A stretch of DNA of 64,000 nucleotides from IMGVR_UViG_3300043436_004687:62001-126000; one strand, 5' to 3'. Positions 895-43,493 are shown, counted from the stretch's first letter. The notes: generated by a model from the sequence alone, not told the origin. Numbers and translations are program-made.

Positions 895-1095
895 AAAATT
901 TTATGGGTATATTAATACCCTGTTATTATAAATATAAGAATAAATTTAAAAAGTTCAATATTATTATGTTAAATTTAGTTAAAATTATACATTATGGTTT
1001 TAAATCTATTTAATTGTTTATGTTTGTATAAGATTGTTTAGATAATTAGTTTCTGTTACTAACCCTTCGTTTTAATAGCACTTCACCATATTTTG

Positions 1096-1179
1096 TAACC
1101 CTGACAAGATTCGAACTTGCAACCCATTGAGGGACAGCATTCTAAGTGCTGCGTGTATAGCCATTTCCACCACAGAGCC
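1096..1179 (-). tRNA. tRNA-Leu(UAG)
   Basis: Acceptor GGCTCTG/CAGGGTT, anticodon arm CAGCA-CTTAGAA-TGCTG, long variable arm, T loop GTTCGAATC; CCA not encoded. Confidence 0.9.
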
Positions 1180-1185
1180 TTCCTT

Positions 1186-1485
1186 TTATTTTAACTTAAT
1201 AAAATCTTCTTTTTCAATTGCTTTAGTAATCCATCTTATGAGTTCACTTCCTTTAATTTCACTATGAAACTCAGTTAAACCCAAATCCTCACTTAAAACA
1301 AGTGTATTGAAAGTTTCGGTTTGAAATGAATTGGAAACTTTTTTATGTTCAACTGTTGATATAGGAAATTGGAATGTTCCGTTAGATAAATCTATATTAT
1401 AAAATAACTTTCCATTATAATAATGAGAAAATTTAGCTAATGTTTTTAATTTGTATAATTCTTTTTTTATTTCTGTTGCATTCAT
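1186..1485 (-). CDS. hypothetical protein
   Basis: 99-aa ORF between two tRNAs; no motif recognised. Confidence 0.7.
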   Translation of the reverse strand: MNATEIKKELYKLKTLAKFSHYYNGKLFYNIDLSNGTFQFPISTVEHKKVSNSFQTETFNTLVLSEDLGLTEFHSEIKGSELIRWITKAIEKEDFIKLK

Positions 1486-1515
1486 TTTTTTTTATGTATT
1501 TAATTTATTAATTAG

Positions 1516-1601
1516 AACTGGAAGTAGGATTCGAACCTACGGTGCACTTTTCAGTAATTAGGGTTGCAATCTAATGAATTCGACCACTTTTCTATTCCAG
1601 C
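1516..1601 (-). tRNA. tRNA-Cys(GCA) with long variable arm
   Basis: Acceptor GCTGGAA/TTCCAGT, U73 discriminator, anticodon loop TTGCAAC, T arm GTAGG-TTCGAAT-CCTAC. Confidence 0.85.
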
Positions 1602-1614
1602 ATTTGTTTAAAAT

Positions 1615-1648
1615 AAAAAATCCGATTAAGTTTTAATTAATCGGATTT
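1615..1648 (-). terminator. Rho-independent terminator-like hairpin
   Basis: 12-bp inverted repeat AAATCCGATTAA/TTAATCGGATTT followed by a T-run on the minus strand. Confidence 0.7.
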
Positions 1649-1670
1649 AAAATTGTTTTATAATTATTTC

Positions 1671-1775
1671 TTAATGAAAATAATTTATTTCAAATTCCGA
1701 TTCTTCCAACCCTAATAGGATCAGTGAAGTTAAACATAAGTTAAGCGCCAATTTGAATTTATTTACTACTTTCAT
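1671..1775 (-). CDS. 34-aa Leu-rich small ORF, candidate leader peptide
   Basis: MKVVNKFKLALNLCLTSLILLGLEESEFEINYFH; below the ORF-track cutoff. Confidence 0.5.
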   Translation of the reverse strand: MKVVNKFKLALNLCLTSLILLGLEESEFEINYFH

Positions 1776-1830
1776 ATTTTTAATATTAGTTCTTTATTAA
1801 TATATAGTTTATTTTTCAAAAAAATAAATA

Positions 1831-2244
1831 TTATTTATTAATTTTATTTAAAATTTGTATTGAATTTGATATTGTTGCTTCATTGGTGCTGTTTTCTAAC
1901 AACCAATTAACATAATTTATTAAATCAAATTTATTTATCTCATCAATTTTTTTATAATTATATTTACCACTAATGACATAAAATGTGTTGTTAGCCTTTC
2001 TAAAAATATCACATCTTTTATTTTTGTAAACCAACTTAATTGAACATATTCTTTTCAAATTATCTACTTCGAATAAGTATCTATTCCCATAGACAAACTT
2101 AAATTGATTTTTGATGATAGTGAATTTTAAATTTTTGTTTACCTTAGCACCATATTCATTACATAAATCATGCCAAATTGATTGATCCTCACCCTCTAAA
2201 TTCTTATAACCATTATAAGTTCCAAAATATTTCTTATTTCCCAT
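1831..2244 (-). CDS. hypothetical protein
   Basis: 137-aa ORF in a packed minus-strand run. Confidence 0.7.
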   Translation of the reverse strand: MGNKKYFGTYNGYKNLEGEDQSIWHDLCNEYGAKVNKNLKFTIIKNQFKFVYGNRYLFEVDNLKRICSIKLVYKNKRCDIFRKANNTFYVISGKYNYKKIDEINKFDLINYVNWLLENSTNEATISNSIQILNKINK

Positions 2245-2589
2245 TTAATTAATAAATTCCAAAGCTTTGTTATAATCTTCTTCAGTAATGATGTGTTTTG
2301 ATATTGGTTCATAATATTTAATGTTTTTAATTTTATCAACAACATCGATTATTGAGTTTGAAAAATACTGATTTTCATCATCATAGTTTTCTAATTCAGG
2401 AAATAAAATATCTTCAACCTTTGAAACCATTTGATCATTGTAAACTCTAGATTCAACACATTCATCAACAACCATACCAACTATAACATCTCTATCTAAC
2501 CCATCAATCTCAATTAAATGGGCTATCAACTCATCTAATGTAGATTCGTAAGTATCGTAATGACAATACTGAGCGATTTTATTTTCCAT
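2245..2589 (-). CDS. hypothetical protein
   Basis: 114-aa acidic ORF abutting its neighbour. Confidence 0.7.
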   Translation of the reverse strand: MENKIAQYCHYDTYESTLDELIAHLIEIDGLDRDVIVGMVVDECVESRVYNDQMVSKVEDILFPELENYDDENQYFSNSIIDVVDKIKNIKYYEPISKHIITEEDYNKALEFIN

Positions 2590-2617
2590 TATTTTTAATT
2601 TATTATTCTAATATAAC

Positions 2618-2836: not shown

Positions 2837-3082
2837 TATAATTTTTTTTGTAAATATATAAATTATTATTTATTAAACCAAATTTATTATTATATTTATT
2901 TTGATGACAAAGGGATACGTTTATTTAATATCAGAATAACTAATACTATTTATATTTGCAAATATACTACTTTATTTTAAACTACCAAAACAATATAAAA
3001 CTTTAACAGTTTATTTTTAATAATATTGAACTTTTTAAATTTATTAATATATTTATAAATATATAATGCCATACGATATTTA

Positions 3083-4360
3083 ATGATAACAATCAAATTA
3101 CCATATAAAGCTAATCAAAATGATATTGAAATAATAAATCAATATCAAAAAGACTATTCTAGTCTTGTGCGTAGCATATATAACCAAAAACTAAATGGTA
3201 AATCCGATATTGAAACTCGTTTATATTCTAAATCAATAAAACAACTTAACTGTTGGTTTGCTGAATCCGCATTATATGATGTAAAAACTCTAATTAAAAA
3301 TAATAAAGAAAATATTATTTTCGGTGGTAAAAAACAATTTATTCGTAGATGTAAAGGTTTAATAACCAACGAACAATATAGAGAAAGTAGAATACTACCC
3401 ATATATTCTGTAGGTCAAACCAATCAATTTGGAAATAGATTGTTTAAATTAAATATATTGGAAGACAATCAAATAATATTTAAACCAAATGCTAAAACTA
3501 AAATAGAGTTAAAATTACCTCAATTAAAACCAAATATTAAAAAACAATTATCACAAATTGAAACTTTATCCAAAAATAAAGAAATACCATTTACAATTAG
3601 ATTAAACAAAACACATGTTTATATTATATTTGAACCAATTGTAAATACAATTCCTAAATTAGATTTAAAAGAAAGATATTTAAGTATTGATTTAAATCCA
3701 AATCATATTGGGCTAAATATAAGTGAATATAAAGATAACAAACATGAAATAAAATATACAAAGCATATTGATTTAACTGTGTTAGTTAAAAATAATAACT
3801 CAAATAAAATAAAATTTGAGAGTATAGAAATATGCAAATCAATTATAAATTTAGCTAAGCATTTCAAATGTAAATATGTATTTATTGAAGATTTGAATAT
3901 TGCAGGAAAAAATCATGATAAGGGTAAAAATTTAAATAAATTAATAAATAATAGTTGGTTTAGAAATTTAGTTTCAAATAATTTAGAAAAAAGATGTAAA
4001 TTAGACAACATATTATTTTATAAGGTAAATCCAGCTTATAGTAGTATAATAGGTAATTTAAGTTATGAATATTCAGATCCAGTAAATGCTAGTCTTGAAA
4101 TAGGCAGAAGAGGATATGAATATAATATATTAAAAAATAAAGATGGTTTTTACCCAGAATTTAAATTAAAAGAGTCATTGCAACACCTATGGAAGGAAAT
4201 GGGTAATGATTTGTTTAAAGAATGGAAAGAATTATTTTTGTTTATTAAAAACTCTAAAATGAGATATAGAGTTCCAATAGATGATGTTAACAAACATCAT
4301 TTGGTTTATAGATATGAATACAGCAAACCACGTGGGTTATTTGAATATATTTTCAAATGA
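3083..4360 (+). CDS. tnpB: TnpB-like RuvC nuclease lacking the zinc finger
   Basis: RuvC-I YLSIDLNP, RuvC-II FIEDL, VNPAYSS followed by DPVNAS (RuvC-III); no CxxC. Confidence 0.8.
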   Translation: MITIKLPYKANQNDIEIINQYQKDYSSLVRSIYNQKLNGKSDIETRLYSKSIKQLNCWFAESALYDVKTLIKNNKENIIFGGKKQFIRRCKGLITNEQYRESRILPIYSVGQTNQFGNRLFKLNILEDNQIIFKPNAKTKIELKLPQLKPNIKKQLSQIETLSKNKEIPFTIRLNKTHVYIIFEPIVNTIPKLDLKERYLSIDLNPNHIGLNISEYKDNKHEIKYTKHIDLTVLVKNNNSNKIKFESIEICKSIINLAKHFKCKYVFIEDLNIAGKNHDKGKNLNKLINNSWFRNLVSNNLEKRCKLDNILFYKVNPAYSSIIGNLSYEYSDPVNASLEIGRRGYEYNILKNKDGFYPEFKLKESLQHLWKEMGNDLFKEWKELFLFIKNSKMRYRVPIDDVNKHHLVYRYEYSKPRGLFEYIFK

Positions 4361-4671
4361 TTGGTTATGTTTATATTATCTCAGAATATGGTGATGAAAT
4401 GCTATACAAAATAGGTTTCACAAAAAATCACCCATCCATTAGATTAAAAAAACTTTCCACTGGCAATTCCAATGAAATTAGACTCTTAAATTTTTATCAG
4501 AGCAAAAACTATGTAAAAATAGAAAAGATGCTTCATTTAAAATTTAATAAATCCAGATATAGAGGTGAATGGTTCAACTTAACTAAAAAAGAAGTTAATT
4601 CATTCACATACGAAGCCGAACTAGCTGACGCTCTAATAAACTTTTTAACTGAGAATAATTCCTTATATTAA
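4357..4671 (+). CDS. GIY-YIG nuclease (T5orf172/MUG113-like)
   Basis: GYVYII..YKIGFT...RL..L.TGN...E..LH....RGEWF. Confidence 0.85.
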   Translation: MIGYVYIISEYGDEMLYKIGFTKNHPSIRLKKLSTGNSNEIRLLNFYQSKNYVKIEKMLHLKFNKSRYRGEWFNLTKKEVNSFTYEAELADALINFLTENNSLY

Positions 4672-20202: not shown

Positions 20203-21033
20203 CTAATTTGAATCTAATATAATATGTTTCCAAATTTTACCAAGTTTTATTTTATTTATTGTAGCTGGGTCCACATTGTATTTCTTAGCTAATGAAACAC
20301 CAGATTCATTATTTTTTAAACGTTTTTTAATCTCAATAACTTTAAAATCGGTTAATTTAGCTAAATGACATTGTTCACCATGATATGAATCCCTACATTT
20401 TTGTTTAACAATATCGCTAGTCTTTTTACCATAATTATGATTTTTATCACCAATTTGAGCTAAACTAATTTTTAATTTTCTTTCTTCGGTGGCTGGTTTA
20501 GTTTTATAACCAGATTTACCTTTATTCCAAGCTGGATAATTTTTTGCTTTACCTTTACTTGCTTTAGACATTTTTTCTTTAGTTTCAATGGACTTTAAAA
20601 CACCTTTAAACCTTTGACTGGTTTTTATTCTACATAATTCAGAAGGAACTTGACCTTTATGAGAATCGCTTAATCTTTGCTTAGTTAAATCTGAGACAAC
20701 ATAATTATCCCCACCTGTTGTTAAATTATAACCATCAATAAATGTTTTATGTTCATTTATTAATTCTTTCTCTTTCTCGTTTAAAATTTTAACTATTTGA
20801 TGTTTATCTGTTTCATTTTCTATTAAATAAATCACTTCAAATTTAAAAAATTCCTTACCATTTTTTTTATAACTTGCTTGTAAATATTTATTTGTATGTA
20901 TTCCTTTATTTAAAGCATATTTATGTTTGGCGATCCTCTCCTTAACATTTATTGATTGACCTATATAACCAGCCATTGTTTTAATATTTGTTATTTTATA
21001 AATCCCAGCTTTATTCCCTTCTAACTTATTCAT
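20203..21033 (-). CDS. GIY-YIG homing endonuclease with NUMOD3 repeats
   Basis: GIYKI...YIGQS, YNLTTGG, repeated S.ETK.KMS-type motifs. Confidence 0.9.
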   Translation of the reverse strand: MNKLEGNKAGIYKITNIKTMAGYIGQSINVKERIAKHKYALNKGIHTNKYLQASYKKNGKEFFKFEVIYLIENETDKHQIVKILNEKEKELINEHKTFIDGYNLTTGGDNYVVSDLTKQRLSDSHKGQVPSELCRIKTSQRFKGVLKSIETKEKMSKASKGKAKNYPAWNKGKSGYKTKPATEERKLKISLAQIGDKNHNYGKKTSDIVKQKCRDSYHGEQCHLAKLTDFKVIEIKKRLKNNESGVSLAKKYNVDPATINKIKLGKIWKHIILDSN

Positions 21034-21096
21034 AATTTTAATTTATATATAAATATGGAAATTTAATTTAAAAAACGGTACTTTATCAATATTTTA

Positions 21097-24130: not shown

Positions 24131-24375
24131 TTATTTTAAACTTTTAAATATTTTAGTTAAATAATTAATTTCTTTTTCAACTAAATCCATCACTTCATTT
24201 GGACTTTCGGCACTAATTAATTTTTTACTAAACCCAATATTAGCATCATAAATAGTTTGTAAACTACAATGAAAACCACAATTTTTATCATATTGTATTA
24301 CGGCTATTGGTATATGAATAGTTTTTCCTAATTTTTCATAACCATCCAATAATTTAGTTTTAACTTCAATCTTAC
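24131..24375 (-). pseudogene. 3' part of a gene interrupted by IS607 (5' part at 26314..26422)
   Basis: Joining the two flanks at G|G gives an open 117-aa frame ...GRWQLR-G-KIEVKTKLLDGYEK... Confidence 0.7.
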
Positions 24376-24446
24376 CTGTTCTTAAAATGACAATTAAATG
24401 TCATTAAATATTAATAACATCAGTTATTAACGAATCTAACGTAAAG

Positions 24447-25604
24447 TTAGATTGCTCGAACCGAGCAATTTTTTAATTTAGTTAAATTTACCCCAATTGG
24501 TTTAAATTCATCAAAATATATTTTTCTTATATTAATAGCACCATTTATATCTCTATCAATATTTAATTCACAATAAGTACAGTTATATTCCCTATCAGTT
24601 ACCTTCAATTCATATTTAACTCTACCACAACAACTACATGTTTTACTTGTGTATTCTTCATCAACTATTTTTACTTCTTTACCATATTTTGTAGCCTTAT
24701 AATTTAATAAATTAACAAATGTTGTTATACTAGATTTAGTATAACTTTTTGATATATTATTTTGCTTTTTACTACCATCTTTCTTAATTAAATTACTTAC
24801 TTCTAATTTACCTATAACTAATATATCTTCATTTAAATTTTTAATATATTTTATTGACTCTTTATGTAAATAATCATTACAACTATTTTTTAATTTAGTG
24901 TAGGCTTTATTTAATTGTTTTTTAGTTTTATTTCTGTTTTTAGAACCCTTCTTTTTCTTACTTAAACTAATATTTAGTTTATTTATTCTATTATTATAAC
25001 TATTAATTAAATTAACACTAAATCGTTTTATTTTAACACCGTTGCTGTCAGTTAAAAGTGTTTTTAAACCTAAATCACAACCTATAACATTAGTATTTTT
25101 ATTTTCTTTTACTCCAATTTCATAATCACAAATAAATGTTAAATAATAACTATTATTTTCTCTAATTAATTTAACCGTTTTATATTTAGTAGGAAATAGT
25201 TCTGTTCCTTTAAACCCTTTTTTTAATTTAGGCAAATAAACTAAATTATTTTTAACTCTAACATCAGTCTCAACAAATTCTATACTATTAAAATTATCTT
25301 TGCCTTTAAATTTAGGAAACCCCTCACCTCTAAAGAAATTATTAAATGATTTATCTACTCTAAATATTATTTCAGATAATGATTTGTTAGGCACATCTTT
25401 CCAAGATGTATCATAATTTTTAATATCAACTAATTCTTTCTTTTGTTCAAATTTATTTAAATATTTACCAGTTGCTTGATAATACCATATTTTTTCTTGT
25501 AAAGCTACATTATAAAGATAATTACATTTTCTTAACCAAAAATCAAATTTTTCTTTATCTGTTTTAGTTATAATTAATTTAATTTTCTTTACTAGATTCA
25601 TCAA
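24447..25604 (-). CDS. tnpB: IS607 TnpB
   Basis: GCDLG, DEEYTSKTCSCC, CTYC, DRDINGA. Confidence 0.92.
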   Translation of the reverse strand: MMNLVKKIKLIITKTDKEKFDFWLRKCNYLYNVALQEKIWYYQATGKYLNKFEQKKELVDIKNYDTSWKDVPNKSLSEIIFRVDKSFNNFFRGEGFPKFKGKDNFNSIEFVETDVRVKNNLVYLPKLKKGFKGTELFPTKYKTVKLIRENNSYYLTFICDYEIGVKENKNTNVIGCDLGLKTLLTDSNGVKIKRFSVNLINSYNNRINKLNISLSKKKKGSKNRNKTKKQLNKAYTKLKNSCNDYLHKESIKYIKNLNEDILVIGKLEVSNLIKKDGSKKQNNISKSYTKSSITTFVNLLNYKATKYGKEVKIVDEEYTSKTCSCCGRVKYELKVTDREYNCTYCELNIDRDINGAINIRKIYFDEFKPIGVNLTKLKNCSVRAI

Positions 25605-26199
25605 TTATATTTTTTAATTTTTCTTTATTTTTATAGCTTCTTAAACCATAAAGTCTTGACGAAAATACGTGTATAATTGACATAAGGTCATTTATCATTT
25701 CTTCTTGTGGTGATAATTTTTCTTCATCGATTATAATTAATTCTACATTATTTTCTTTACATAAATTTTCAATTAATTCAAATCCAAATCTAACTAATCT
25801 ATCTTTATGAGCAATTATTAATTTATTTATTTTTTGTGTTGTAATTTCATTTATTAATTTTAAAAAGTATTTTCGTTTATAATTTAGTCCAGAACCAATA
25901 TCTGAATATAGTTCTGATATATTGATTTGGTTTATTGTACAATAGTTTTCAACAAATTCTATTTGTGTTTTCAAATCATTTTTTTGTGAATGTGATGAAA
26001 CTCTACAATAGCATATTGTTTTTAATTCAATTAGTTCGTTTAATGGTTTATTAATATAATTTAGATATTGTTTATGCGAATATATTTTTCTCCCTTTAGG
26101 TGTAGTTATATCAGGTTTAAGAATATTTAAATTATCCCATCTTTGTATTGTTCTAATGTGAACATTTAATAGTTTAGCAAATTTACCACTTGAATACAT
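25579..26199 (-). CDS. tnpA: IS607 TnpA serine recombinase with MerR-type HTH
   Basis: N-terminal HTH, YCRVSS, DIGSGLN..R, DRLVRFGF. Confidence 0.95.
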   Translation of the reverse strand: MYSSGKFAKLLNVHIRTIQRWDNLNILKPDITTPKGRKIYSHKQYLNYINKPLNELIELKTICYCRVSSHSQKNDLKTQIEFVENYCTINQINISELYSDIGSGLNYKRKYFLKLINEITTQKINKLIIAHKDRLVRFGFELIENLCKENNVELIIIDEEKLSPQEEMINDLMSIIHVFSSRLYGLRSYKNKEKLKNIIDESSKEN

Positions 26200-26414
26200 A
26201 TATTGTTACTTGTTTATTATAAATATAAGGTAAAATAATAAAAGTTAAATAAAATGTAATTAATTTGTTATTTATTTTTACTTTTAGTTATGTTTTAACT
26301 AATAGTTAACTACCTCTTAATTGCCATCTACCAAATTTATCTGGTTTTATATTAATATTATCAATTGAATTGACTTCATTACATTTTTCTATGTAATGAT
26401 AATACCATTTTATT

Positions 26415-26648
26415 TTATTCATCTTTTTTAAATGTGTTAGTAAATAAAAATGAATTTACCACCAAAAGAAATATTGTCCCTAACATCACCACAATTAATT
26501 TCAATAATATTATAAATGGTAATAAAATTGAAGATAGAAACGTAAATTTATAATTAACTATTGTTTCATAAAAACCCCATTTAAGGGCTATAAAAACCCC
26601 AATAACATATATAAAATATAGTAAATATTCTGCTATAATTTTTCTCAT
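26415..26648 (-). CDS. hypothetical membrane protein
   Basis: Two hydrophobic helices. Confidence 0.65.
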   Translation of the reverse strand: MRKIIAEYLLYFIYVIGVFIALKWGFYETIVNYKFTFLSSILLPFIILLKLIVVMLGTIFLLVVNSFLFTNTFKKDE

Positions 26649-30065: not shown

Positions 30066-30143
30066 TGGGGTGGTATATCGGGATTGAACCGATGACCCTC
30101 GGTACCACAAACCGATGCTCTAACCAACTGAGCTAATACCACC
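30066..30143 (-). tRNA. tRNA-His(GUG) with encoded G-1, C73 and CCA
   Basis: G-GTGGTAT/ATACCAC-C-CCA, anticodon arm TCGGT-TTGTGGT-ACCGA. Confidence 0.92.
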
Positions 30144-30152
30144 ATATATTAT

Positions 30153-30376
30153 TTAATCTTCAGTTTCTACTTCGTTTATTTCAACAAATATTACCGTAAA
30201 TCCGCCCTCCTTTTTAAATTTTAATTCACCATAATAACCAGAAGCATCTGCAATTTTTCTGTATTTATCAACAATAAAATCAAAATCATTTATTAGAGTT
30301 AATTTCTTTTCAACGCCTAATTTTCTACAATGTATCATACCACCATTAATAATTATCTTTTTGTCTATTTCTAGAA
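30153..30376 (-). pseudogene. small gene whose 5' end was probably separated by the adjacent TnpB insertion
   Basis: Frame is open upstream of the annotated Met (LEIDKKIIINGG-MIHC); it joins in frame to ATG 31687 (MKIKL) if 30377..31671 is removed. Confidence 0.5.
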
Positions 30377-31671
30377 CTGTTTAAAATCACATAATAAAAT
30401 ATAATTATTTTAACCAAGTGTTACCACTTGACTTGGATAAACAGCAATACCCTCTATTCCATTAGCAAACGCATTTGGAACTGCTTTTCTTAATATGTTA
30501 TAACTACCATTTACATCAGAGTTAATAAATTTATTTTCACCTCTAACTTTATACATACCTCGTTTATATCTATATCCACTAAACCCATTTGAATATTTAT
30601 CACCGTAAACTGGTATATAATCTAAATTTAAAAAACTAGCCTTGCTTGTATAACTTTCTTCTTGAAATAATACTTTAATACCGCTTAATAACCCTTTATA
30701 TTGTAACATACTAACTAATTTATCAAATGGTATTGAAACAAAATTTTGGTTGTTTCTCTTTCCCATATTAATTTCTTGTTTCCAAAAATTATTATGTCCA
30801 ACAATAATTGTGTTTAATTCATTTTCAAGACACCAATCAATTAAATATTTACTACTTTGATGCAAATAAGTCTCAATTTTATTATTCCTAATTAAACCTA
30901 ATTTAATTATTTTAGTGGTAGCTTTTCTTGATTTTAATTCAGCTAATTTTTTATTGAAAAATTGATTTATACTTTTTAATGGTCTACCATTAATAATGAT
31001 TGGTTTAACACCATTCTTATTTGAAGTTATAGTCATTAAATTATTTACCCCTAAATCAATAGAACAATAATTATCATTATTTTCTTTTAGTAATATGTTT
31101 TCTCTTTCATATACAATATTTATTTTAAATTTATTATAATATGGTTTAACTTGTACCTCAATTATTTTTTTATCTATATTTTTAACTTTAATTTGAATAT
31201 TTAAAGTTGATAAACCAATCAAACCGTTTTTAATATGTTTAGTTAAAACACTATTATCAATAAAAATAGCTGTAAATCTACCATCTTTTTTTAAATATTT
31301 AGGTAATTTTGGTTTACCTGTGAAACTATTTTTATTTGCTTTATATACTTTAGTTGCTTCAAAAAATCCTTTCCAATTTGCATCAAGTGTTCTAATAACA
31401 CATCTACTAACTCTAGTTGGTAATGCCTTATATTCTGGCAAATCTTTACAAATATTAAACAAATATAGTTTTCTTAACCAATTACCATTAGATATAAACT
31501 CATTTCTTATAATATAGTTTACAGAATTATATAAGTTTTTAGTTTTGAATGTTAATTCATCTAATTCTTTTGTTTTATTTACAATATGTGATTCAACTAA
31601 TTTCATTGTGTATTAATATATACTCCTTTATTATAAATATAAAACATTTTTTAAAAAAATTCAATAATTAC
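30377..31671 (-). mobile_element. non-autonomous tnpB-only element
   Basis: Ends GTAATT... and ...AAACAG resemble the IS607 ends; removal restores an ORF. Confidence 0.55.
30410..31606 (-). CDS. tnpB: TnpB (no zinc finger)
   Basis: CSIDLG, EESYTSK, NSDVNG. Confidence 0.9.
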   Translation of the reverse strand: MKLVESHIVNKTKELDELTFKTKNLYNSVNYIIRNEFISNGNWLRKLYLFNICKDLPEYKALPTRVSRCVIRTLDANWKGFFEATKVYKANKNSFTGKPKLPKYLKKDGRFTAIFIDNSVLTKHIKNGLIGLSTLNIQIKVKNIDKKIIEVQVKPYYNKFKINIVYERENILLKENNDNYCSIDLGVNNLMTITSNKNGVKPIIINGRPLKSINQFFNKKLAELKSRKATTKIIKLGLIRNNKIETYLHQSSKYLIDWCLENELNTIIVGHNNFWKQEINMGKRNNQNFVSIPFDKLVSMLQYKGLLSGIKVLFQEESYTSKASFLNLDYIPVYGDKYSNGFSGYRYKRGMYKVRGENKFINSDVNGSYNILRKAVPNAFANGIEGIAVYPSQVVTLG

Positions 31672-32830: not shown

Positions 32831-33984
32831 TAAATTAATTTTTTAAATTCTTCAATTTCTAATTTATTTACCATTTTACCAACTTCTGGACCAGATACAT
32901 TATATTTGTTAATCACATCCTGACCACTAATACTTAATTTATACTTAATAAAAGCATTTAAGAGATTATTATCTATTTCATGAACTAAATGTCCAAACCT
33001 TCTTAATTGTTCATCAGATAATCTTATGTTTGATTGTAATTTCTTAGCTAATGGTGCGTTTTCAATTGTTAAACCCAATAAAGAAACTAAAAATGAAATT
33101 GATTTTACTTCCTCACTTGAATAGGTAAGAGTATTTAACTGTTTTTTTAATAAATCAACAGAATTATTTCTCAATAAAAAAGCTAATAGAATAACATAAT
33201 CCTTTTCTTCAATAAAATCACTATCAACATTCAACCCCCTAAATATTTCTTTAAAGAGATCATATCTTTTATATAAATCCAATAAAAATTTGATTGATTG
33301 TGCTGATTGAATTGATTTTAATAATTCATCTCTAATTCTTTCATTTGAAACTCCGTTTAAACTAGAATTTTTTAATAATTGTTTATCAACATCCTCATCA
33401 ATTTTTGAGTTATATCTAGCACTAAACCTACAAAATCTTAAAATCCTTAGTGGGTCTTCTTCAAATCTATCTTCTGCTTTACCAACAGTTCTAACAATAT
33501 TATGTTTAATATCACTAATACCACCAACCAAATCAATTATTTCACCCTTATCAATGTCATAATAAAGAGCGTTGCAAGTAAGATCTCTTCTTTCAGCATC
33601 GGTGTTTATTGAAACACCTAATTTAACTTCTGGGTGTCTTCCACTAGAATCTGAACGCATAGTTGCTATTTCATATTCATCATTATCGGTGAAAACATTG
33701 ATAACACCGAACGACTTCCCAGTGGCTAATGTTTTATAACCAGATTGTTGTAACATATTTTCAACACTATCTGGTAAAGCATCGGTAACCAAATCATAAT
33801 CTTTTATTTTTTTCCCCAATAAAGAATCTCTAACGGCCCCACCAACAATAAAAATAGAATAATTATTATCTTTAAATAATTTATTCATTTTTTTTATATC
33901 TTCTGGTACATTTATAGGGAATTTTAATCTAATTTCCCCATTTAAAGCCTCATTAAGCCTTTGCTTTATAAAATTTTTAATCAT
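32830..33984 (-). CDS. cca: CCA-adding tRNA nucleotidyltransferase (class II)
   Basis: VGGAVRD, DYD, RRDLT.NAL, EDPLRILR, ERI..EL. Confidence 0.9.
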   Translation of the reverse strand: MIKNFIKQRLNEALNGEIRLKFPINVPEDIKKMNKLFKDNNYSIFIVGGAVRDSLLGKKIKDYDLVTDALPDSVENMLQQSGYKTLATGKSFGVINVFTDNDEYEIATMRSDSSGRHPEVKLGVSINTDAERRDLTCNALYYDIDKGEIIDLVGGISDIKHNIVRTVGKAEDRFEEDPLRILRFCRFSARYNSKIDEDVDKQLLKNSSLNGVSNERIRDELLKSIQSAQSIKFLLDLYKRYDLFKEIFRGLNVDSDFIEEKDYVILLAFLLRNNSVDLLKKQLNTLTYSSEEVKSISFLVSLLGLTIENAPLAKKLQSNIRLSDEQLRRFGHLVHEIDNNLLNAFIKYKLSISGQDVINKYNVSGPEVGKMVNKLEIEEFKKLI

Positions 33985-34051
33985 GTACTATATTTTTTAT
34001 TAATTTTATTTATTTTAGCTCCCCTTGAAGAATACTTTTGTAGCCAATTAC

Positions 34052-35382
34052 CGTTCATTAAAACTTATGAAAATCTAGGATTCTCACTTATCCCAATTTC
34101 TATAGATTAACTCTATATGGGTGAACGGCAACACCCTCTATTCCGTCAGCAAAAGCATTCGGAACTGCTTTTTTAAGTATATTATAACTTCCATTTACGT
34201 CAGCATTAATAAGTGTATTACTCGCAGATTGAAATAACCCTCGCTTGATTCGTTTACCTACGTAAACCTCATGTTTAGTTATTTTTTCATTATCTAAAAA
34301 TGAACACTTACTGGTATAACTCTCTTCATGTGTTATAAAATTAATTCCGTGTTTCTCACATTTATATGTAAGCATTTGAATTATTTTATAATAAGGGATC
34401 TGAACAAAGTTCTGGTTGTTGACTCTACCAATATTAATACCTTGTTTCCAATTCTCATTATAGCCAACAACAAGTGTATTTAATTCATTCTGTAAACAGA
34501 ATTTAACAAGATAATCAGTTGATTTATGTAAGTAATCATTTACTTTACAATCTCTTTTAAAAGTTAACTTCTGAATACGTTTAGATGTCTTTACATTTTT
34601 AGGTAATGCGCTTTGGTAATTAGATTTTTGTTTATTGTAAAATTGATTTATGGATTTTAATGGTCTACCGTTAACTACTACAGGTTTAGTTCCTGCCTTG
34701 TTTGATGTTATAGTCATTAAATTGTTAAGTCCTAAATCAACTGAACTATAATGTTTATTATCTTTCTTTAAAGGTTGTTCTTTATGGTCATATATTATAT
34801 TGATTTTAAATTTATTTGTTCTTGTGGGGATTACTTGCACTTCGATTAATTTACCAGTTGTTTGTAATGGTATTCTTAATTTAAGTGAAGATAATCCAAT
34901 TTTACCATTTTTAGGTTTAAGTATTGCTGTTTCATAAAACAAGGCAGTAAACTTTCCATTTTTAGGTAAATACTTGGGTAAATTAGGTTTAGCTTTAAAC
35001 AGTTGCTTATTAGCTCTCCATTTTTTAATACAAGAGAAGAATGATTGCCAGTTAGCATCTAAAGTTCTAAGAACACCACGAGCAATACGTACTGGTAGAC
35101 ACTTATATTCTTCAATATCTTTACAGATGGTAAACATATCGAATTTAGAAATGTATTTACCAGTAGAAATAAATTCGTTACGGATAATGTAATTAGCTTT
35201 ATTATAAAGGTTTTTACATTTAAACGTAATTTGGTTTAGTTCGATAGACTGATTAATGATATGTGATTCAACTAGCAGCATTTAATAAGTGTAATAATTT
35301 TCTTTACTCTACATATAAATATATAGAAAAATGTAAAAGTTTGATTTAGATAAAGAATAAATTATTAAATAATGTTAATAAC
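34052..35382 (-). mobile_element. non-autonomous tnpB-only element (ends approximate)
   Basis: Left end GTTATTAAC resembles IS607 GTAGTTAAC; right end ...TGAACG|G. Confidence 0.45.
34100..35281 (-). CDS. tnpB: TnpB, paralogue of 30410..31606
   Basis: SSVDLG, EESYTSKCS, NADVNG; shared VESHI N-terminus. Confidence 0.9.
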   Translation of the reverse strand: MLLVESHIINQSIELNQITFKCKNLYNKANYIIRNEFISTGKYISKFDMFTICKDIEEYKCLPVRIARGVLRTLDANWQSFFSCIKKWRANKQLFKAKPNLPKYLPKNGKFTALFYETAILKPKNGKIGLSSLKLRIPLQTTGKLIEVQVIPTRTNKFKINIIYDHKEQPLKKDNKHYSSVDLGLNNLMTITSNKAGTKPVVVNGRPLKSINQFYNKQKSNYQSALPKNVKTSKRIQKLTFKRDCKVNDYLHKSTDYLVKFCLQNELNTLVVGYNENWKQGINIGRVNNQNFVQIPYYKIIQMLTYKCEKHGINFITHEESYTSKCSFLDNEKITKHEVYVGKRIKRGLFQSASNTLINADVNGSYNILKKAVPNAFADGIEGVAVHPYRVNL

Positions 35383-35418
35383 TAATTTTTCGTATGAAAA
35401 CATATATTTTCTTAGAAT

Positions 35419-35682
35419 TTATTGAACAGTTAAATTACCCCATTTTTCTTTTTGTATGTCGTAATAAGTCATATCTTTAATTTTAGATGGGATATATTCA
35501 CCTGGTTTAGAGGATATGTGATATTTATTTTTGCACAAATCACATTGATAAATGGAAAGTTCATCTCTCCATGGATTTTTATCACTTCTTGATAAGATTG
35601 AGAATAATGCTTTTTTAGCTTCCCATTTTGTATTATAAGATTTTTTATTACAATTCATATTAAACATATTTTTAAAATACAA
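35419..35682 (-). CDS. hypothetical protein with CxxC/H zinc motif
   Basis: C.K.SY...Y.C..C...YHISS. Confidence 0.6.
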   Translation of the reverse strand: MYFKNMFNMNCNKKSYNTKWEAKKALFSILSRSDKNPWRDELSIYQCDLCKNKYHISSKPGEYIPSKIKDMTYYDIQKEKWGNLTVQ

Positions 35683-36235: not shown

Positions 36236-37492
36236 TTAATTACAATTACCTTTTAAATTAAAACCAGTTTTACCAACTGGTGAATAAACACTAACTTTAG
36301 TTTCTGAATCATTAACGTCGTATTTTAAAATACCCTTTTTCATGGTATAAAATACAAATTCTCTTTGACCAGAATCCCATAGTTGTTTTAACTTAATAAC
36401 ACCATTTTTAATTTCATTTCTACTATCCTTTAAATAATCATAATTTGAGTCATTTAATAAGGTATTTAATAATTCATCAAAACTATTAAATTTTTTTAAA
36501 TCCTTTAAACCCTCCATTGCTGGTATTTTAGGGTTGGGAATATTGATTTGCGTTAATTCAGCTACATATAATGGGACTAATTTCCATTCTTTATAATTGT
36601 GTTGTTTATCCACAAAATAACCAGTATCCGCAATTATGTTTCCATTAGAAGTTATTACCATCCTATCTGGAATTGAACCTGGGGAGATGTTCATTTCTCC
36701 ACCATCATTTAATTGTTGTTCAAAACTAAGATAACCATTTTTTTCGGAACTTTGGGAACCATCGTTTTTAGAAAAAGAAATCTCACAAGGTTTAACCTCA
36801 TTCTTACCCTCTAAAAATACATCTAATCTAACATATTGATCTTTAGTGTATTTTTCATCATCCTTATTATAACCATCCCAAGGAACATCACCAATGTTGG
36901 TTACCTTATCGATTTTTATATTTAAATTATTTTGCTTTAGATATGAATTTACTAAATTAGACATTTTGTTAACCCTCATATTAGCTAACTCACCACTTTT
37001 TAAATTATTTTGATTTGGTACTTGAGATTCTGATGCTGTTATTTTTATAGAGTACTTAACATTACTATTTGAATTTAAAAACCCCTTTAGGCTATTTAAT
37101 TTGCTTAAAACACTACCCTCATCAATTTCGTAAGCACCACTTTTAAAACTATTTGTTAAATTTATTGAATATTCAGCTTTTTTATTTTCTTTTCTGATGT
37201 TTGAATTTATGTTGGTCAATTGACTTATTAAATTTTTATTTTCTTTTGTTGTATTTTGATAAGCTTGTGAAAAAGATGGGTTTGCCATAAGTGTTGATAT
37301 GACTGCGGCAGTTATAAATTTTCTTTGGTTTGATTTTAAAACTGATATCAATCTGTTGATTAATTCAGATGAATTTACTTCATCTATAGTTTCACCTAAT
37401 ATAAAATCAATTACTTTTTGATCGGTTTTATTTAAATGTTGTTTATTTTCAAATTCTAATAATGCAACCCTAACCTTATCTTTAACAAACAT
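36236..37492 (-). CDS. hypothetical protein with an OmpA-C-like central domain
   Basis: F.SG.Y.I ... I.I.ASES ... LA..R pattern. Confidence 0.5.
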   Translation of the reverse strand: MFVKDKVRVALLEFENKQHLNKTDQKVIDFILGETIDEVNSSELINRLISVLKSNQRKFITAAVISTLMANPSFSQAYQNTTKENKNLISQLTNINSNIRKENKKAEYSINLTNSFKSGAYEIDEGSVLSKLNSLKGFLNSNSNVKYSIKITASESQVPNQNNLKSGELANMRVNKMSNLVNSYLKQNNLNIKIDKVTNIGDVPWDGYNKDDEKYTKDQYVRLDVFLEGKNEVKPCEISFSKNDGSQSSEKNGYLSFEQQLNDGGEMNISPGSIPDRMVITSNGNIIADTGYFVDKQHNYKEWKLVPLYVAELTQINIPNPKIPAMEGLKDLKKFNSFDELLNTLLNDSNYDYLKDSRNEIKNGVIKLKQLWDSGQREFVFYTMKKGILKYDVNDSETKVSVYSPVGKTGFNLKGNCN

Positions 37493-37530
37493 AAATTCTT
37501 TTAATATAAATAGAAAAAAACCTTAATTAA

Positions 37531-38065: not shown

Positions 38066-38073
38066 ATAGTTTA

Positions 38074-40237: not shown

Positions 40238-40541
40238 TTTTTATTAAGTTAAAATTTAACAATTCATTCGTTTTTATAATTGCTGATTGCATCACTTCTA
40301 ATCTAGAATTAAAACTAAAATTAGATTTATAATTTTTAATATGAAACATAAACCTCTCACACTTTTTACGGTGGCCGAATTTACTTTTTATATTAATAAA
40401 CCACCCAATAGAATCAAAATATTCTACTATATAAGCATATTGAATAATTTTTGACATACCATAAAACAATGATTTATTATCAAAAATATTAGTTTCAATT
40501 AACCAATTTTCAAAATCACTTTTTACTTTATCTGTTAACAT
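40218..40541 (-). CDS. hypothetical protein
   Basis: 107-aa ORF. Confidence 0.7.
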   Translation of the reverse strand: MLTDKVKSDFENWLIETNIFDNKSLFYGMSKIIQYAYIVEYFDSIGWFINIKSKFGHRKKCERFMFHIKNYKSNFSFNSRLEVMQSAIIKTNELLNFNLIKNGKFKR

Positions 40542-40553
40542 ATTTTTAAAAAT

Positions 40554-40775
40554 TTAAGAACTAACAACATCCGTATAATTTTTAATTGATTGGTCAACTA
40601 AAATATTATCTCTAATTGATAATTGAATGGGTCTTAAATTCATTGGAACACGAAGATAATTGTATCCATTATTTAAGTTATCCATATCATCTAAGTTTTT
40701 AAAAGAAATATAAGCAAAAGTCCCATTTTCCGTTATTTCAATGTGAAACACTTCAATATTTGTTAAATTTTTCAT
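40554..40775 (-). CDS. hypothetical protein
   Basis: 73-aa ORF. Confidence 0.6.
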   Translation of the reverse strand: MKNLTNIEVFHIEITENGTFAYISFKNLDDMDNLNNGYNYLRVPMNLRPIQLSIRDNILVDQSIKNYTDVVSS

Positions 40776-40798
40776 ATTTTAATTATTTATTTATTTAT

Positions 40799-41341
40799 TT
40801 ATTTTTTATCATTCATAATTAACCCTTCGGATATCCAACTTTGATCTTGTATTAAACGATATGTTCTAACCACAGCAAAATTAGTAATCTTAAAATATTC
40901 AAATTTTATCCCATAGTCATCTGCTTTTAATTTAGATAATACAGCAGTTTCAAGTTTCTCTGGTGTAATACCACCTAAATCGTTATTCCATATAAAATTA
41001 GCAACTTCACTCATTGCAATATTTTGAAGTGTTTTTTCTGGGTGATATAAAGTTTGATATAATTTTTCAATATTAGATATTGAATAACCAAATGAACTAT
41101 TTAAAGTTATTGTTTTCAAATCTTTGGAGGTTAAGGTTTGCATTGGCATTTCCGTAACTCTTAATCTATTTTCTTGAATGAAAATACTATCTAAATATGG
41201 TAATCTAAAATAGATACCACCCTCCAATCTTTTTATTTGTTTACCATTACGAACCCTAACACCACTTTGCCAAGGTTGTACTATAACCCATATCTTAACA
41301 GCATTAAATATATATTCAAAAAAATCTTTTACTTGATTCAT
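40799..41341 (-). CDS. SPFH/band-7 domain protein
   Basis: VQPWQSGVRVRNG..L.GG.YF..P.LD, Q.LTSKD. Confidence 0.85.
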   Translation of the reverse strand: MNQVKDFFEYIFNAVKIWVIVQPWQSGVRVRNGKQIKRLEGGIYFRLPYLDSIFIQENRLRVTEMPMQTLTSKDLKTITLNSSFGYSISNIEKLYQTLYHPEKTLQNIAMSEVANFIWNNDLGGITPEKLETAVLSKLKADDYGIKFEYFKITNFAVVRTYRLIQDQSWISEGLIMNDKK

Positions 41342-41432
41342 ATCGGTTGTTCTAACTTTAATGCAAATATATAATACAATTTTTACTTTACCAAACTATT
41401 TATTATTTATTTTTATATTTTAAATTAATAAT

Positions 41433-42095
41433 ATGGAATATAGAGTTATATTAACACAAAATGGTGAATTTAAACAAAATTTCCTAATCACCAAAAATAA
41501 AAGAACTGCTTTTGATAAATTCAAGGAAATAAAACGAAAGTCAGAAAAAGTTTTATTTGAAGTACAGCATGTGAACACAAAAAAAATATTTCCAGTTAAA
41601 CATATGCTTTATATTGTTAAAGAGTATGAATCAACTGATATTAAAAGAGCAATCCCAGATGGGAACGGTTCTTATATTGAAGAACCATTGTTATTTGATA
41701 AATGGTTCGTTATGGCCTCTGAAAAATATAAAAAAGAAGAAAAATTTGCCATTTACGGTATGGACACTAGAGCCGAAAGGCAACCTATTAGTGGGGTAAT
41801 GAAAATTTTAATGAAAGGTCTTACAGACACAAAACAAAATAAACAAGTTATTGTGGTGCATAATAAATTAGTTATTTACAATGACCAAAATTTTGATATG
41901 ATATTCTGTAAATGTATTAAGGATTGTAAAAGACTACATGACACACTTTATAAGACCGCTGTTGCAATTAAACTTAAAAACCTTATGTTTATGGGTATTG
42001 CCTCAAATGCCTCGTTATATCACATAAATAAAACAATTATTCAATGGACTGGTTGGGATTATAATAAAGTTAGAAGACAGACAACTAGACCGTAA
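41433..42095 (+). CDS. hypothetical protein
   Basis: 220-aa plus-strand ORF, divergent from the 41341 gene. Confidence 0.75.
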   Translation: MEYRVILTQNGEFKQNFLITKNKRTAFDKFKEIKRKSEKVLFEVQHVNTKKIFPVKHMLYIVKEYESTDIKRAIPDGNGSYIEEPLLFDKWFVMASEKYKKEEKFAIYGMDTRAERQPISGVMKILMKGLTDTKQNKQVIVVHNKLVIYNDQNFDMIFCKCIKDCKRLHDTLYKTAVAIKLKNLMFMGIASNASLYHINKTIIQWTGWDYNKVRRQTTRP

Positions 42096-42165
42096 ATTAT
42101 TTTCTATTTCTTTATTGTTACATCTTTAAATTCACAATAATCACATTATGACATTCTCCCAATCT

Positions 42166-43392
42166 TTAAAGAAAATTGGGTTTTTTGTTTAAAGATTTAT
42201 TCATAATATTAAAATTATGAATCACATTAGATAAATCTAATGGCTCTGCCATAAGAGCAATATGGTTATTAAAGTATCTGTTTAAAATATTAATAGCAGC
42301 ATTTAAATCTCTATCTATTTCTATATCATTACTTAATTTAACTGTTCTATCACTTAAATTAATTTTATTTTTAAATTGTTTACCAGTTAATGAATTAGTT
42401 TGTGTTGTATATTGTTCATTTTGCTTTAGAATATCTGTTTTATACTTAAAACTTTTTTGTTTCAATAATTCAATAAACATATTAAGATTACTCATCCCAA
42501 ATGATTTACTTATCTTTTTATATTTATTCTCATAATTATTCATTAATTTTTTAACGGATAAATCACCAATAACTATAGTTTTATAGTTCATGTTCAATAA
42601 TTGTTTACTCTGAACATGTAGAGTTTGTTTGACTTGCTTATTTTTCTTATTATATAATTTATTAATAGTTATTTTTAATTTTTTATATTTTCTACTACTA
42701 TTATTTTTATTACTTAATTTACTCTGAACTTTAGCAATTTGTTTTAAATAATATTTAGATATCTGTTTAGATTTATTTGTAATAATAATTTGATTACCTT
42801 TATTATCTACACCAGTACCTAATCGTTTTAATCCTAAATCAATTGCTAATATTTTATTTTCTTGTGTAATAGTATCCACATATATCAATTCTTCTTCAAT
42901 AACAATATCACACAACCATTTATTATTAACAAATTTAACCCTAATTTCTTTAATATCTAATTTAGTTAAATCCAAATGTGATTTATAATTGAGTTTAATT
43001 TTATTAATTGTGATTAATTCATTAGAATTAACAACCCAACCAGATTGATTAAATATGATAGTATGAAATTTATTAATATCCTTTATTTTATATGGCGATT
43101 TAGCTGTTTTATCTTTTTTAATTAATTCGAAAAAACCCCTATATGAAGAATAAACTTCTTTAGATATCCGCTGACATGCTTTAGAATTTAATTTACATAA
43201 ATTACTATTTTTTCTTAATACTGTTATTTCTTTATCTAAGTCATAATTATGTCTAATTGATTTATTTAATTCATAAGACTCTTGTTCAAGATCAATTAGT
43301 TTATTCCATAATTCATTTCTTAATGATGATACCTCATGAAGTTGTTCAACTTGTAATTTATTAGGAAACAATCTAATTATGTAAGTTTTCAT
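42166..43392 (-). CDS. tnpB: solo TnpB
   Basis: IRLFPN N-terminus, LAIDLG, NEQYTTQ, DRDLNAA. Confidence 0.9.
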   Translation of the reverse strand: MKTYIIRLFPNKLQVEQLHEVSSLRNELWNKLIDLEQESYELNKSIRHNYDLDKEITVLRKNSNLCKLNSKACQRISKEVYSSYRGFFELIKKDKTAKSPYKIKDINKFHTIIFNQSGWVVNSNELITINKIKLNYKSHLDLTKLDIKEIRVKFVNNKWLCDIVIEEELIYVDTITQENKILAIDLGLKRLGTGVDNKGNQIIITNKSKQISKYYLKQIAKVQSKLSNKNNSSRKYKKLKITINKLYNKKNKQVKQTLHVQSKQLLNMNYKTIVIGDLSVKKLMNNYENKYKKISKSFGMSNLNMFIELLKQKSFKYKTDILKQNEQYTTQTNSLTGKQFKNKINLSDRTVKLSNDIEIDRDLNAAINILNRYFNNHIALMAEPLDLSNVIHNFNIMNKSLNKKPNFL

Positions 43393-43493
43393 TATTTACT
43401 TAAAGTATTTATATATAAATATACAGTAATTATACAAAAGTTTAAAATAATAAATGGTTCGTAAACCATTCCAATCTATTTTAACTTCTTCCA

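What the first reader, a model, noticed from the sequence alone, without database searches (positions are those of the whole stretch)
927..43442. Same bipartite motif, AACTTTT-N13-15-TATTTATA, upstream of all six TnpB/IS cassettes
Seen (coding strand): 927..955 (N14), 3029..3057 (N14), 26218..26246 (N14, before tnpA), 35314..35341 (N13), 43414..43442 (N14), and the variant AATTTTT-N15 at 31632..31661. The copies at 927 and 3029 share about 35 nearly identical nt although the proteins are divergent. TATTTAT alone precedes putative virion genes (28605, 37492, 50384, 60952) and homing endonucleases (21033, 57839, 60149), whereas ordinary genes use the host TAnnTTTG promoter. Inference: unrelated selfish elements have converged on, or captured, a phage late promoter with an upstream element, or the motif is a left-end site used in trans by the single TnpA.
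Basis: partly seen in the sequence, partly recalled or inferred. Interest (0 to 1): 0.7.

Follow-up and report, generated by a model that had tools for sequence, protein, structure and literature searches.

The report
Portable late-type promoter inside phage TnpB elements
The repeated motif is real and is most likely a promoter that IS607-type TnpB insertion elements carry inside their own left ends, built on the late-gene promoter box of the jumbo phage they live in, so it looks like ordinary selfish-element biology in a neat and undescribed form, with no transcription data yet.

Summary
AACTTTT-N13-15-TATTTATA occurs 5 times in the window against 0.05 expected. One AATTTTT variant makes six sites, each 19-33 nt before the first gene of a TnpB/IS unit.

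The window lies in a complete 339.6-kb, 26% GC jumbo phage whose ordinary genes use Bacteroidota-type promoters (TTTG-N19-TAnnTTTG).

- **Downstream half.** TATTTATA is a second promoter class of the phage. It lies 0-50 nt before 47 genes, including tail sheath, baseplate, tail fibres and two homing endonucleases.
- **Upstream half.** The AACTTTT box is nearly confined to TnpB units: 8 of 8 against 2 of 39 other TATTTATA genes (p = 1.4e-7).
- **Position.** Three elements have mapped ends, and in each the motif lies 65-135 nt inside the left end. So the elements carry it.
- **Other phages.** Homologous units in other AT-rich phages have it too. In one related phage it also precedes non-TnpB genes.

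The TnpA-site reading is not supported. The motif is not at element tips, it is absent from right ends, and the IS607 tips have no other copy in the genome. Transcription itself is untested, because no RNA run was listed.

Verdict: a new variant of a known kind, of moderate interest.

The parts
927..955 (-). Bipartite motif before tnpB1 (AACTTTT-N14-TATTTATA). It lies 107-135 nt inside the left end of the B1 element.
3029..3057 (+). Bipartite motif before the TnpB-like gene B2. It shares 41 nt with the 927 copy, with 2 mismatches.
26218..26246 (-). Bipartite motif before tnpA. It lies 65-93 nt inside the left end of the IS607-like element.
31632..31661 (-). Variant motif AATTTTT-N15-TATTTATA before tnpB4. 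It begins 6 nt after the stop codon of the upstream gene, which appears intact.
35314..35341 (-). Bipartite motif (N13) before tnpB5. It lies 96-123 nt inside the left end of the B5 element.
43414..43442 (-). Bipartite motif (N14) before tnpB6.
24375..26312 (-). IS607-like element carrying tnpA and tnpB3, 1,938 bp. It is inserted after AGAGG, ends in GG, and has no target duplication. The junction is ambiguous within the shared AGGTA.
   Evidence: NCBIfam NF033518 at 220 bits
25579..26199 (-). tnpA, a serine recombinase with an N-terminal MerR-type helix-turn-helix domain.
24447..25604 (-). tnpB3 (OrfB_IS605 and Cas12f1-like TNB domains).
24131..24376 (-). C-terminal piece of the 118-aa gene split by the IS607-like element. 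The N-terminal piece is at 26306..26422.
26306..26422 (-). N-terminal piece of the split gene.
1..1062 (-). B1 solo-tnpB element. Its ORF occupies 1..894 in the window, and the element runs on to genome position 61638, beyond the window start. The left end is 168 nt. The element is bounded by GGG and GG inside a tRNA-like gene.
1063..1087 (-). 5' part (acceptor strand and D arm) of the tRNA-like gene interrupted by B1.
3083..4360 (+). B2, a TnpB-like protein of the PF27229/SSO2105 family.
30410..31606 (-). tnpB4.
34021..35437 (-). B5 solo-tnpB element, 1,417 bp (ORF 34100..35281). It is bounded by GGGG on both sides and splits a conserved 94-aa gene.
42166..43392 (-). tnpB6.
21048..21055 (-). 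TATTTATA box alone, 15 nt before the GIY-YIG homing endonuclease gene 20203..21033.
37505..37512 (-). TATTTATA box alone, directly after a terminator-like hairpin, before the 418-aa gene 36236..37492.
50402..50409 (-). TATTTATA box alone, directly after a terminator-like hairpin, before the 345-aa gene 49347..50384.
53195..54025 (-). One of the phage's two RpoD/RpoS-like sigma factors, with regions 1.2, 2 and 4. It is a candidate reader of the promoter; this is inference only.

Best explanation
The motif is a promoter carried inside the left end of IS607-type elements and their solo-tnpB and TnpB-like derivatives that live in this Bacteroidota-type jumbo phage.

**Downstream half.** TA-TATTTATA is the phage's second promoter class. 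It looks like a late class because it precedes the tail sheath, baseplate and tail-fibre genes and the homing endonucleases.

**Upstream half.** (T)T-n-AACTTTT sits where a -35 or activator box would sit: AAC-N15-17-TATATT. The phage's own late genes almost never have it.

**Consequence.** The elements take their transcription signal with them when they move, so tnpA/tnpB, and presumably the guide RNA cut from the tnpB transcript, are expressed on the phage's schedule rather than the host's.

**What is shown**
- The motif's statistics.
- Its position inside three elements with mapped ends.
- Its retention in two copies that have no other left-end sequence.
- Its recurrence in homologous units of other phages.
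- The association of the TATTTATA box with structural genes.

**What is inferred**
- That it is transcribed.
- That the timing is late.
- Which polymerase or sigma factor reads it. The phage encodes two RpoD-like sigma factors with region 4.
For: - **Not chance.** The window holds 5 exact sites against 0.05 expected.
- **TATTTATA placement.**
  - Of its 161 genomic copies, 45 end 5-45 nt before a start codon, against 2 and 1 in the next two 41-nt bins.
  - Among all 256 AT-only 8-mers it has the highest upstream fraction.
  - It precedes the tail sheath, baseplate hub, baseplate wedge/tail-fibre and minor-tail genes and the HNH and GIY-YIG endonucleases.
- **Box association.** The AACTTTT box (at most 1 mismatch, spacer 13-15) is present at 8 of 8 TnpB/IS units. 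It is present at 2 of 39 other TATTTATA genes. Fisher p = 1.4e-7.
- **Mapped ends.**
  - An uninterrupted homologue, P0122/L178, fixes the IS607-like element at 24375..26312.
  - The flanks of B1 form a tRNA only when joined.
  - B5 splits a conserved 94-aa gene.
  - In all three the motif lies 65-135 nt inside the left end.
- **Truncated copies.** B4 and B8 have nothing left of the box: an upstream gene that appears intact, or a divergent early promoter, abuts it. The box and the late box are nevertheless retained.
- **Other phages.**
  - 10 of 54 AT-rich IMG/VR loci with a related TnpB have the motif in the 90 nt before tnpA or tnpB, against a background of 0.003 per 90 nt.
  - A homologue of B2 has it too.
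- **Promoter class of the clade.** In phage G007 there are 5 exact sites against 0 in the reversed control. Two precede TnpB genes and three precede other genes. G002 shows the same.
Against: - There is no transcript evidence of any kind. No RNA run was listed.
- 'Late' rests only on the kind of genes downstream. A UvsX-like gene also has the box.
- TATTTATA is not over-represented genome-wide (161 copies against about 239 in shuffles). The case rests on its position, not its abundance.
- Its lead over other AT-only 8-mers is modest (0.27 against 0.15-0.20).
- The box resembles the host geometry TTG-N19-TAnnTTT, so a weak host promoter is not excluded.
- B9 lacks the motif, and only about a fifth of related phage loci have it.
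- Left-end boundaries are unproven for B2, B6 and B7.
Confidence: 0.62

Rival explanations
1. The motif is a weak variant of the host sigma-A promoter (TTG-N19-TAnnTTTG with a final A in place of G). It would give low, constitutive or early expression of the transposon genes and would have nothing to do with late transcription.
For: - The geometry matches. In B1, B2 and B4 a TTG lies 19-20 nt before TATATTTA.
- The phage's many host-type promoters include TATATTTG, which is one base away.
Against: - The final G of the -7 box is absent in 8 of 8 units, and only 3 of 8 have TTG.
- The conserved letters (AACTTTT, and TATA after TATTT) are not those of the host consensus.
- The same TATTTATA box, without any TTG, heads structural genes.
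Confidence: 0.15
2. The shared sequence only reflects recent copying of one promoter module between cassettes within this genome, by gene conversion or recombination. On this view the upstream box has no function of its own.
For: - B1 and B2 share 41 nt with 2 mismatches.
- tnpA and B8 share 39 nt at 92% identity (61 nt with 53 identities in the longer alignment), although the genes behind them are unrelated or only about 26% identical.
Against: - B4, B5, B6 and B7 share only the two boxes, with unrelated spacers of variable length.
- The same two boxes recur before homologous units in other phages from other samples.
- They also recur before non-mobile genes.
Confidence: 0.1
3. The motif is a left-end recombination or binding site through which the single IS607 TnpA mobilises all cassettes in trans.
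For: - There is only one tnpA for nine TnpB-type genes.
- The motif is on the left side of every unit.
- IS607 TnpA has a MerR-type DNA-binding domain.
Against: - The motif is 65-135 nt from the mapped left tips.
- No half-site recurs within 300 nt of the tnpB stop codons, which cover the right ends (B8 has a lone TATTTATA there, before the next gene). The left and right tips of the IS607 copy have no other copy in the genome.
- The motif precedes non-transposon genes here and in relatives.
- Its downstream half is a general promoter box.
Confidence: 0.05

Closest known systems
IS607-family insertion sequences and their solo-tnpB derivatives
   Same: - The TnpA is a serine recombinase with a MerR-like helix-turn-helix domain.
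- tnpB overlaps it downstream.
- Insertion is after GG, the element ends in GG, and there are no inverted repeats or target duplication. These traits are described in PMC13565253.
- Expression signals lie in the left end.
   Different: - The copies live in a jumbo phage.
- The left-end promoter is of the phage's own second (late-type) class plus an extra upstream box. The cyanobacterial relatives instead have a host-type promoter, TTGTAA-N17-TAGTAT.
- No Rfam guide-RNA family matched the two 3' ends searched, those of B3 and B5.
T4-type late promoters and the late or middle expression of phage homing-endonuclease genes (own knowledge: T4 late box TATAAATA read by gp55, the MotA box of middle promoters, seg/mob genes)
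   Same: - An 8-bp AT-only box close to the start codon of structural genes, without a conserved -35.
- Selfish nuclease genes are wired to the same box.
- An additional box about 30 bp upstream defines a subclass.
   Different: - The box is TATTTATA, not TATAAATA.
- The phage has Bacteroidota-type early promoters and two full-length RpoD-like sigma factors.
- gp55 and MotA homologues were not looked for.
Bacteroidota sigma-A promoters (TTTG-N19-TAnnTTTG; own knowledge, Bayley 2000 and Chen 2007)
   Same: The same overall spacing, and the same TAnnTTT core.
   Different: - The terminal G is missing in every copy.
- The -33 TTG is present in only 3 of 8.
- Different letters are conserved.

Membership tests
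IS607 family (element 24375..26312) | Serine-recombinase TnpA with an N-terminal MerR-type helix-turn-helix domain | tested here: met
   Pfam Resolvase and MerR domains. NCBIfam NF033518 'IS607 family transposase' scores 220 bits against a cut-off of 110.
IS607 family (element 24375..26312) | Inserted after GG, ends in GG, no terminal inverted repeats, no target duplication | tested here: met
   The empty site in L178 reads CTAAGAGGTAAAATTGAAG. The left junction is AAGAGGTA|GTTAAC and the right junction is AACAGGTA|AGATTG. The rule itself is taken from PMC13565253.
IS607 family (element 24375..26312) | tnpB with an intact RuvC D-E-D triad downstream of tnpA | tested here: met
   OrfB_IS605 and TNB domains. 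D184, E317 and D364 (B4 numbering) are invariant in the alignment of B3-B6. Their assignment to the RuvC D-E-D triad is my reading.
IS607 family (element 24375..26312) | Guide (omega) RNA scaffold at the 3' end | tested here: inconclusive
   No Rfam match at E <= 1. Hairpins are visible in the 75 nt after the stop codon. No RNA data.
IS607-type solo tnpB elements (B1, B5) | GG-bounded insertion that interrupts a recognisable gene | tested here: met
   B1: a tRNA is called only on the joined flanks, and a 7-bp acceptor stem forms across the junction. B5: homologues P0124-P0134 span the junction.
TnpB (gene B2, 3083..4360) | Recognisable TnpB domains or fold | tested here: inconclusive
   No Pfam-A or PHROG hit, and no BLAST similarity to the other copies. 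Homologues carry PF27229 and some are named IS605 OrfB. The Atlas model matches TnpB clusters at TM 0.58-0.67.
Late promoter class of the phage (TATTTATA) | Fixed position before structural genes | tested here: met
   45 of 161 copies end 5-45 nt before a start codon. Tail sheath, baseplate and fibre genes are among them.
Late promoter class of the phage (TATTTATA) | Transcription start just downstream, active late in infection | not testable with these tools
   No RNA run was listed. The phage is known only from lake metagenomes.
Host sigma-A promoter (TTTG-N19-TAnnTTTG) | Terminal G of the -7 box and TTG at -33 | tested here: not met
   G is absent in 8 of 8 units, and TTG is present in 3 of 8.
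Transposase end-binding site | Located at the element tips and present at both ends | tested here: not met
   The motif is 65-135 nt from the left tips. No half-site recurs within 300 nt of the tnpB stop codons. The tips are unique in the genome.

The most novel reading that the evidence does not exclude
A lineage of IS607/TnpB elements has specialised in AT-rich jumbo phages of Bacteroidota. On this reading:
- The elements carry a portable two-box promoter read by a phage-encoded RpoD-like sigma factor, with AACTTTT serving as its -35 element.
- TnpB and its guide RNA are therefore made exactly while phage genomes replicate, which would drive homing between co-infecting phage genomes.
- Decayed copies that have lost their transposon ends keep the promoter because the nuclease is still useful to the element or to the phage.
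Probability: 0.3. Interest if true: 0.6.

Novelty: new variant of a known kind. Interest (0 to 1): 0.4.

Why it matters
- **Promoter classes.** It defines three promoter classes for an uncultured group of Bacteroidota jumbo phages: host-type early, TATTTATA, and AACTTTT + TATTTATA. Gene timing can then be predicted from sequence.
- **Adaptation of the elements.** It shows that RNA-guided-nuclease transposons can adapt their expression signal to a viral transcription programme rather than a cellular one.
- **A test case for TnpB homing.** If confirmed, it gives a handle for testing whether TnpB acts as a homing nuclease between phage genomes.
- **A practical tool.** It would also be a compact promoter for expressing genes late in such phages.

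None of this overturns current understanding.

Tried and rejected
- **Nucleotide relatives.** A megablast of 10 kb against the deposited phage collection found nothing.
- **Empty sites from metagenome contigs.** Contigs of four lake runs were too fragmentary to help. One 28-nt-sided joint was judged spurious.
- **Synteny for empty sites of B4 and B5.**
  - Other 300-350 kb phages share only the TnpB regions at 65-68% DNA identity.
  - Loci around CCA-enzyme homologues share no neighbouring genes.
- **The split gene in viral contigs.** The search found nothing there or in five large relatives. The large protein database then gave the decisive homologue.
- **Guide-RNA families.** Rfam found only tRNAs and nothing at two tnpB 3' ends.
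- **RNA runs.** None was listed.
- **AACTTTT as an inherited left tip.** I considered whether the box is homologous to the TATTGTAAAACTTC tip of the cyanobacterial relatives. I rejected this as unproven: the resemblance is about 12 nt in AT-rich DNA, and in three mapped elements the box is not at the tip.
- **The box as the TAM.** Rejected for the same reason. The mapped flanks instead end in AGAGG, AAGGG and TGGGG, as expected for IS607.
- **The box as an independent element elsewhere.** Alone, it shows no positional enrichment beyond the TnpB set.


Full report
**Setting**

The window is bases 62,001-126,000 of a single 339,635-bp contig with 26% GC. IMG/VR classes the record as complete, with direct terminal repeats.
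- It encodes a tail sheath, baseplate and fibre proteins, a UvsX-like recombinase, a DNA ligase, a CCA-adding enzyme, tRNAs, and homing endonucleases. It is a jumbo myovirus-like phage.
- It is known only from lake-water metagenomes.
- About 115 genes are preceded, 5-45 nt before the start codon, by TAnnTTTG. Most of these have TTTG 19 nt further upstream. This is the Bacteroidota sigma-A promoter pattern (own knowledge), so the host is probably a member of that phylum.

**The observation**

- The exact pattern occurs five times in the window, against 0.05 expected from shuffles. The AATTTTT variant gives a sixth site. Every site is on the coding strand, 19-33 nt before the first gene of a TnpB/IS unit.
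- Genome-wide there are nine TnpB-type genes and one tnpA. Eight of the nine units carry the motif with at most one mismatch in the upstream half. B9 does not.
- The gene at 3083..4360 has no Pfam-A hit. It belongs to a large, mostly viral family (PF27229) that JGI names IS605 OrfB. Its predicted structure resembles TnpB.

**The downstream half is a general promoter box**

- TATTTATA is not over-represented in the genome as a whole (161 copies), but its placement is extreme. Forty-five copies end 5-45 nt before a start codon, against 2 and 1 in the next two bins.
- It has the highest upstream fraction of all 256 AT-only 8-mers.
- It precedes 47 distinct genes (48 sites). These include the tail sheath, baseplate hub, baseplate wedge/fibre and minor-tail proteins, and an HNH and a GIY-YIG homing endonuclease. 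It often follows directly after a terminator-like hairpin.
- I read it as the phage's late promoter box. The timing is an inference from the kind of genes downstream.

**The upstream half marks the TnpB units**

- Among TATTTATA-headed genes, AACTTTT (at most 1 mismatch, spacer 13-15) is present at 8 of 8 TnpB/IS units. It is present at 2 of 39 others: the HNH gene and a 55-aa ORF. Fisher p = 1.4e-7.
- The TnpB copies also always have TA before TATTTATA. Their consensus is TT-n-AACTTTT-n-AAAT-N8-TATATTTATAA.
- The box sits where a -35 or activator box would sit: AAC-N15-17-TATATT.
- Alone, the box shows no positional signal elsewhere in the genome.

**The motif lies inside the elements**

- **IS607-like element (tnpA + tnpB3).**
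  - A 118-aa protein from another lake sample (P0122, contig L178) is the uninterrupted form of a gene that is split here into 26306..26422 and 24131..24376.
  - DNA comparison places the element at 24375..26312, inserted after AGAGG and ending in GG with no duplication. These are the IS607 rules summarised in PMC13565253.
  - TnpA passes the NCBIfam IS607 model.
  - The motif is 65-93 nt inside the left end.
- **B1.**
  - It is bounded by GGG and GG.
  - Its two flanks give a tRNA call only when joined.
  - The joined flanks fold with a 7-bp acceptor stem across the junction.
  - The motif is 107-135 nt inside.
- **B5.** It is bounded by GGGG on both sides and splits a conserved 94-aa gene, whose last 12 codons resume right after the element. 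The motif is 96-123 nt inside.
- **B4 and B8.**
  - These copies have no left-end DNA beyond the box.
  - In B4 the box starts 6 nt after the stop codon of a gene that aligns to its family up to residue 125 of 127.
  - In B8 the box lies 12 nt from the -33 box of a divergent early promoter.
  - These look like end-truncated copies that kept only the promoter.

**Not a transposase site**

- The left and right tips of the IS607-like element have no other copy in the genome.
- The only part of its left end that recurs is the motif itself: 92% over 39 nt with B8.
- Neither half-site recurs within 300 nt of the tnpB stop codons, except a lone TATTTATA after B8 that precedes the next gene.

**Relatives**

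- Among 54 AT-rich viral loci that encode a relative of TnpB4/5/7/8, ten have the motif in the 90 nt before tnpA or tnpB. The background rate is 0.003 per 90 nt. Nineteen have TATTTATA.
- A homologue of B2 in a 196-kb contig has it too.
- In the complete 349-kb phage behind L095 the exact motif occurs five times, against none in the reversed control. Two copies precede TnpB genes and three precede unrelated genes of unknown function. The 43-kb contig behind L113 shows the same.
- So the two-box form is a promoter class of this phage group, and the elements carry it.
- Cyanobacterial relatives of the same TnpB family carry a different, host-type promoter in their left end. That fits adaptation of the left end to whichever genome the element lives in.

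**Module exchange**

- The 41-nt near-identity between the B1 and B2 promoters shows recent copying of the promoter module. So does the 39-61 nt near-identity between the tnpA and B8 promoters. In both pairs the genes behind the promoters are unrelated or only about 26% identical.
- The other copies share only the two boxes, which points to selection on the boxes themselves.

**Limits**

- There is no transcript evidence. No RNA run was listed.
- The guide RNAs were not identified.
- It is unknown which polymerase form reads the promoter. The phage has two RpoD/RpoS-like sigma factors with region 4, which makes a -35-type reading plausible but unproven.
- A weak host-type promoter remains a rival. 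The spacing is the same, but the defining G is absent in all eight copies.

**Verdict**

This is a new variant of known things: insertion sequences with internal promoters, and selfish nuclease genes wired to phage late transcription. I found no prior description in the literature searches I ran.

Noticed in passing
window 1063..1087 (-) and genome 61555..61637 (outside the window, just left of it): The B1 element interrupts a tRNA-like gene (anticodon TAG) at the GG of its D loop. ARAGORN calls a tRNA only on the joined flanks. A normal tRNA-Leu(TAG) lies next to it at 1095..1179.
   Followed up: partly
window 33981..34020 and 35438..35682 (-): The gene split by B5 lacks 10 residues (NWLQNYAKNG) that all homologues have between two GG-containing codons. 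This could be an adjacent deletion made at insertion, or natural variation.
   Followed up: partly
window 905..920, 43395..43405; L003:1017-1029; L004:1315-1324; relatives L090-L120: Short G/C-clamped palindromes lie between the late box and the ATG of solo tnpB genes: GGGTATTAATATACCC, TACTTTAAGTA, AGTCTATTAGACT and GTATATATAC. Relatives have GTCTATATAGAC, TGGGTATATATACCCA and GTGTATACAC. The stems change in a compensating way, which suggests a 5'-leader hairpin. Significance against other AT-rich leaders was not established.
   Followed up: partly
window 4357..4671 (+): A 104-aa ORF with weak matches to endonuclease and homing-endonuclease PHROGs (from its sequence I read it as T5orf172/GIY-YIG-like) overlaps the stop codon of the TnpB-like gene B2 (ATGA). 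It may belong to the same mobile unit.
   Followed up: no
window 53195..54025 (-) and genome 22464..23348 (L195:465-1349, -): The phage encodes two full-length RpoD/RpoS-like sigma factors. The one in the window lies in an operon headed by a host-type promoter.
   Followed up: partly
genome 295,000-335,000 (outside the window): Dozens of small genes carry an almost identical ~60-nt early promoter, ...TTTG-N19-TATCTTTGTAGTGTATTAATCA. The conserved GTAGTGTATTAATCA after the -7 box is unexplained.
   Followed up: no
window 26247..26312 (-); L003 and L004 upstream of tnpB7/8: Directly left of the box, B7 and B8 abut a divergent host-type early promoter. The left end of the IS607-like element holds a degenerate copy of such a promoter facing outward (TTTG-N20-TATGTTTT). 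Outward transcription from the left end is possible.
   Followed up: no
L005:1317-2435 (genome 262817..263935, -): The ninth TnpB (B9), which has all three Pfam TnpB domains, lacks the motif. At best it has a degenerate AACTTGT-N14-TATAGTAC.
   Followed up: partly
window 30143..30409 (-): The 267 nt between tnpB4 and tRNA-His contain a coding-looking stretch (...KLGVEKKLTLINDFDFIVDKYRKIADASGYYGELKFKKEGGFTVIFVEINEVETED*) with no obvious start codon. It may be a gene remnant cut by the B4 insertion.
   Followed up: no
genome 249175..249203 (-), L006: The only exact bipartite motif in this genome that is not before a TnpB-type gene precedes a 55-aa ORF of unknown function.
   Followed up: no
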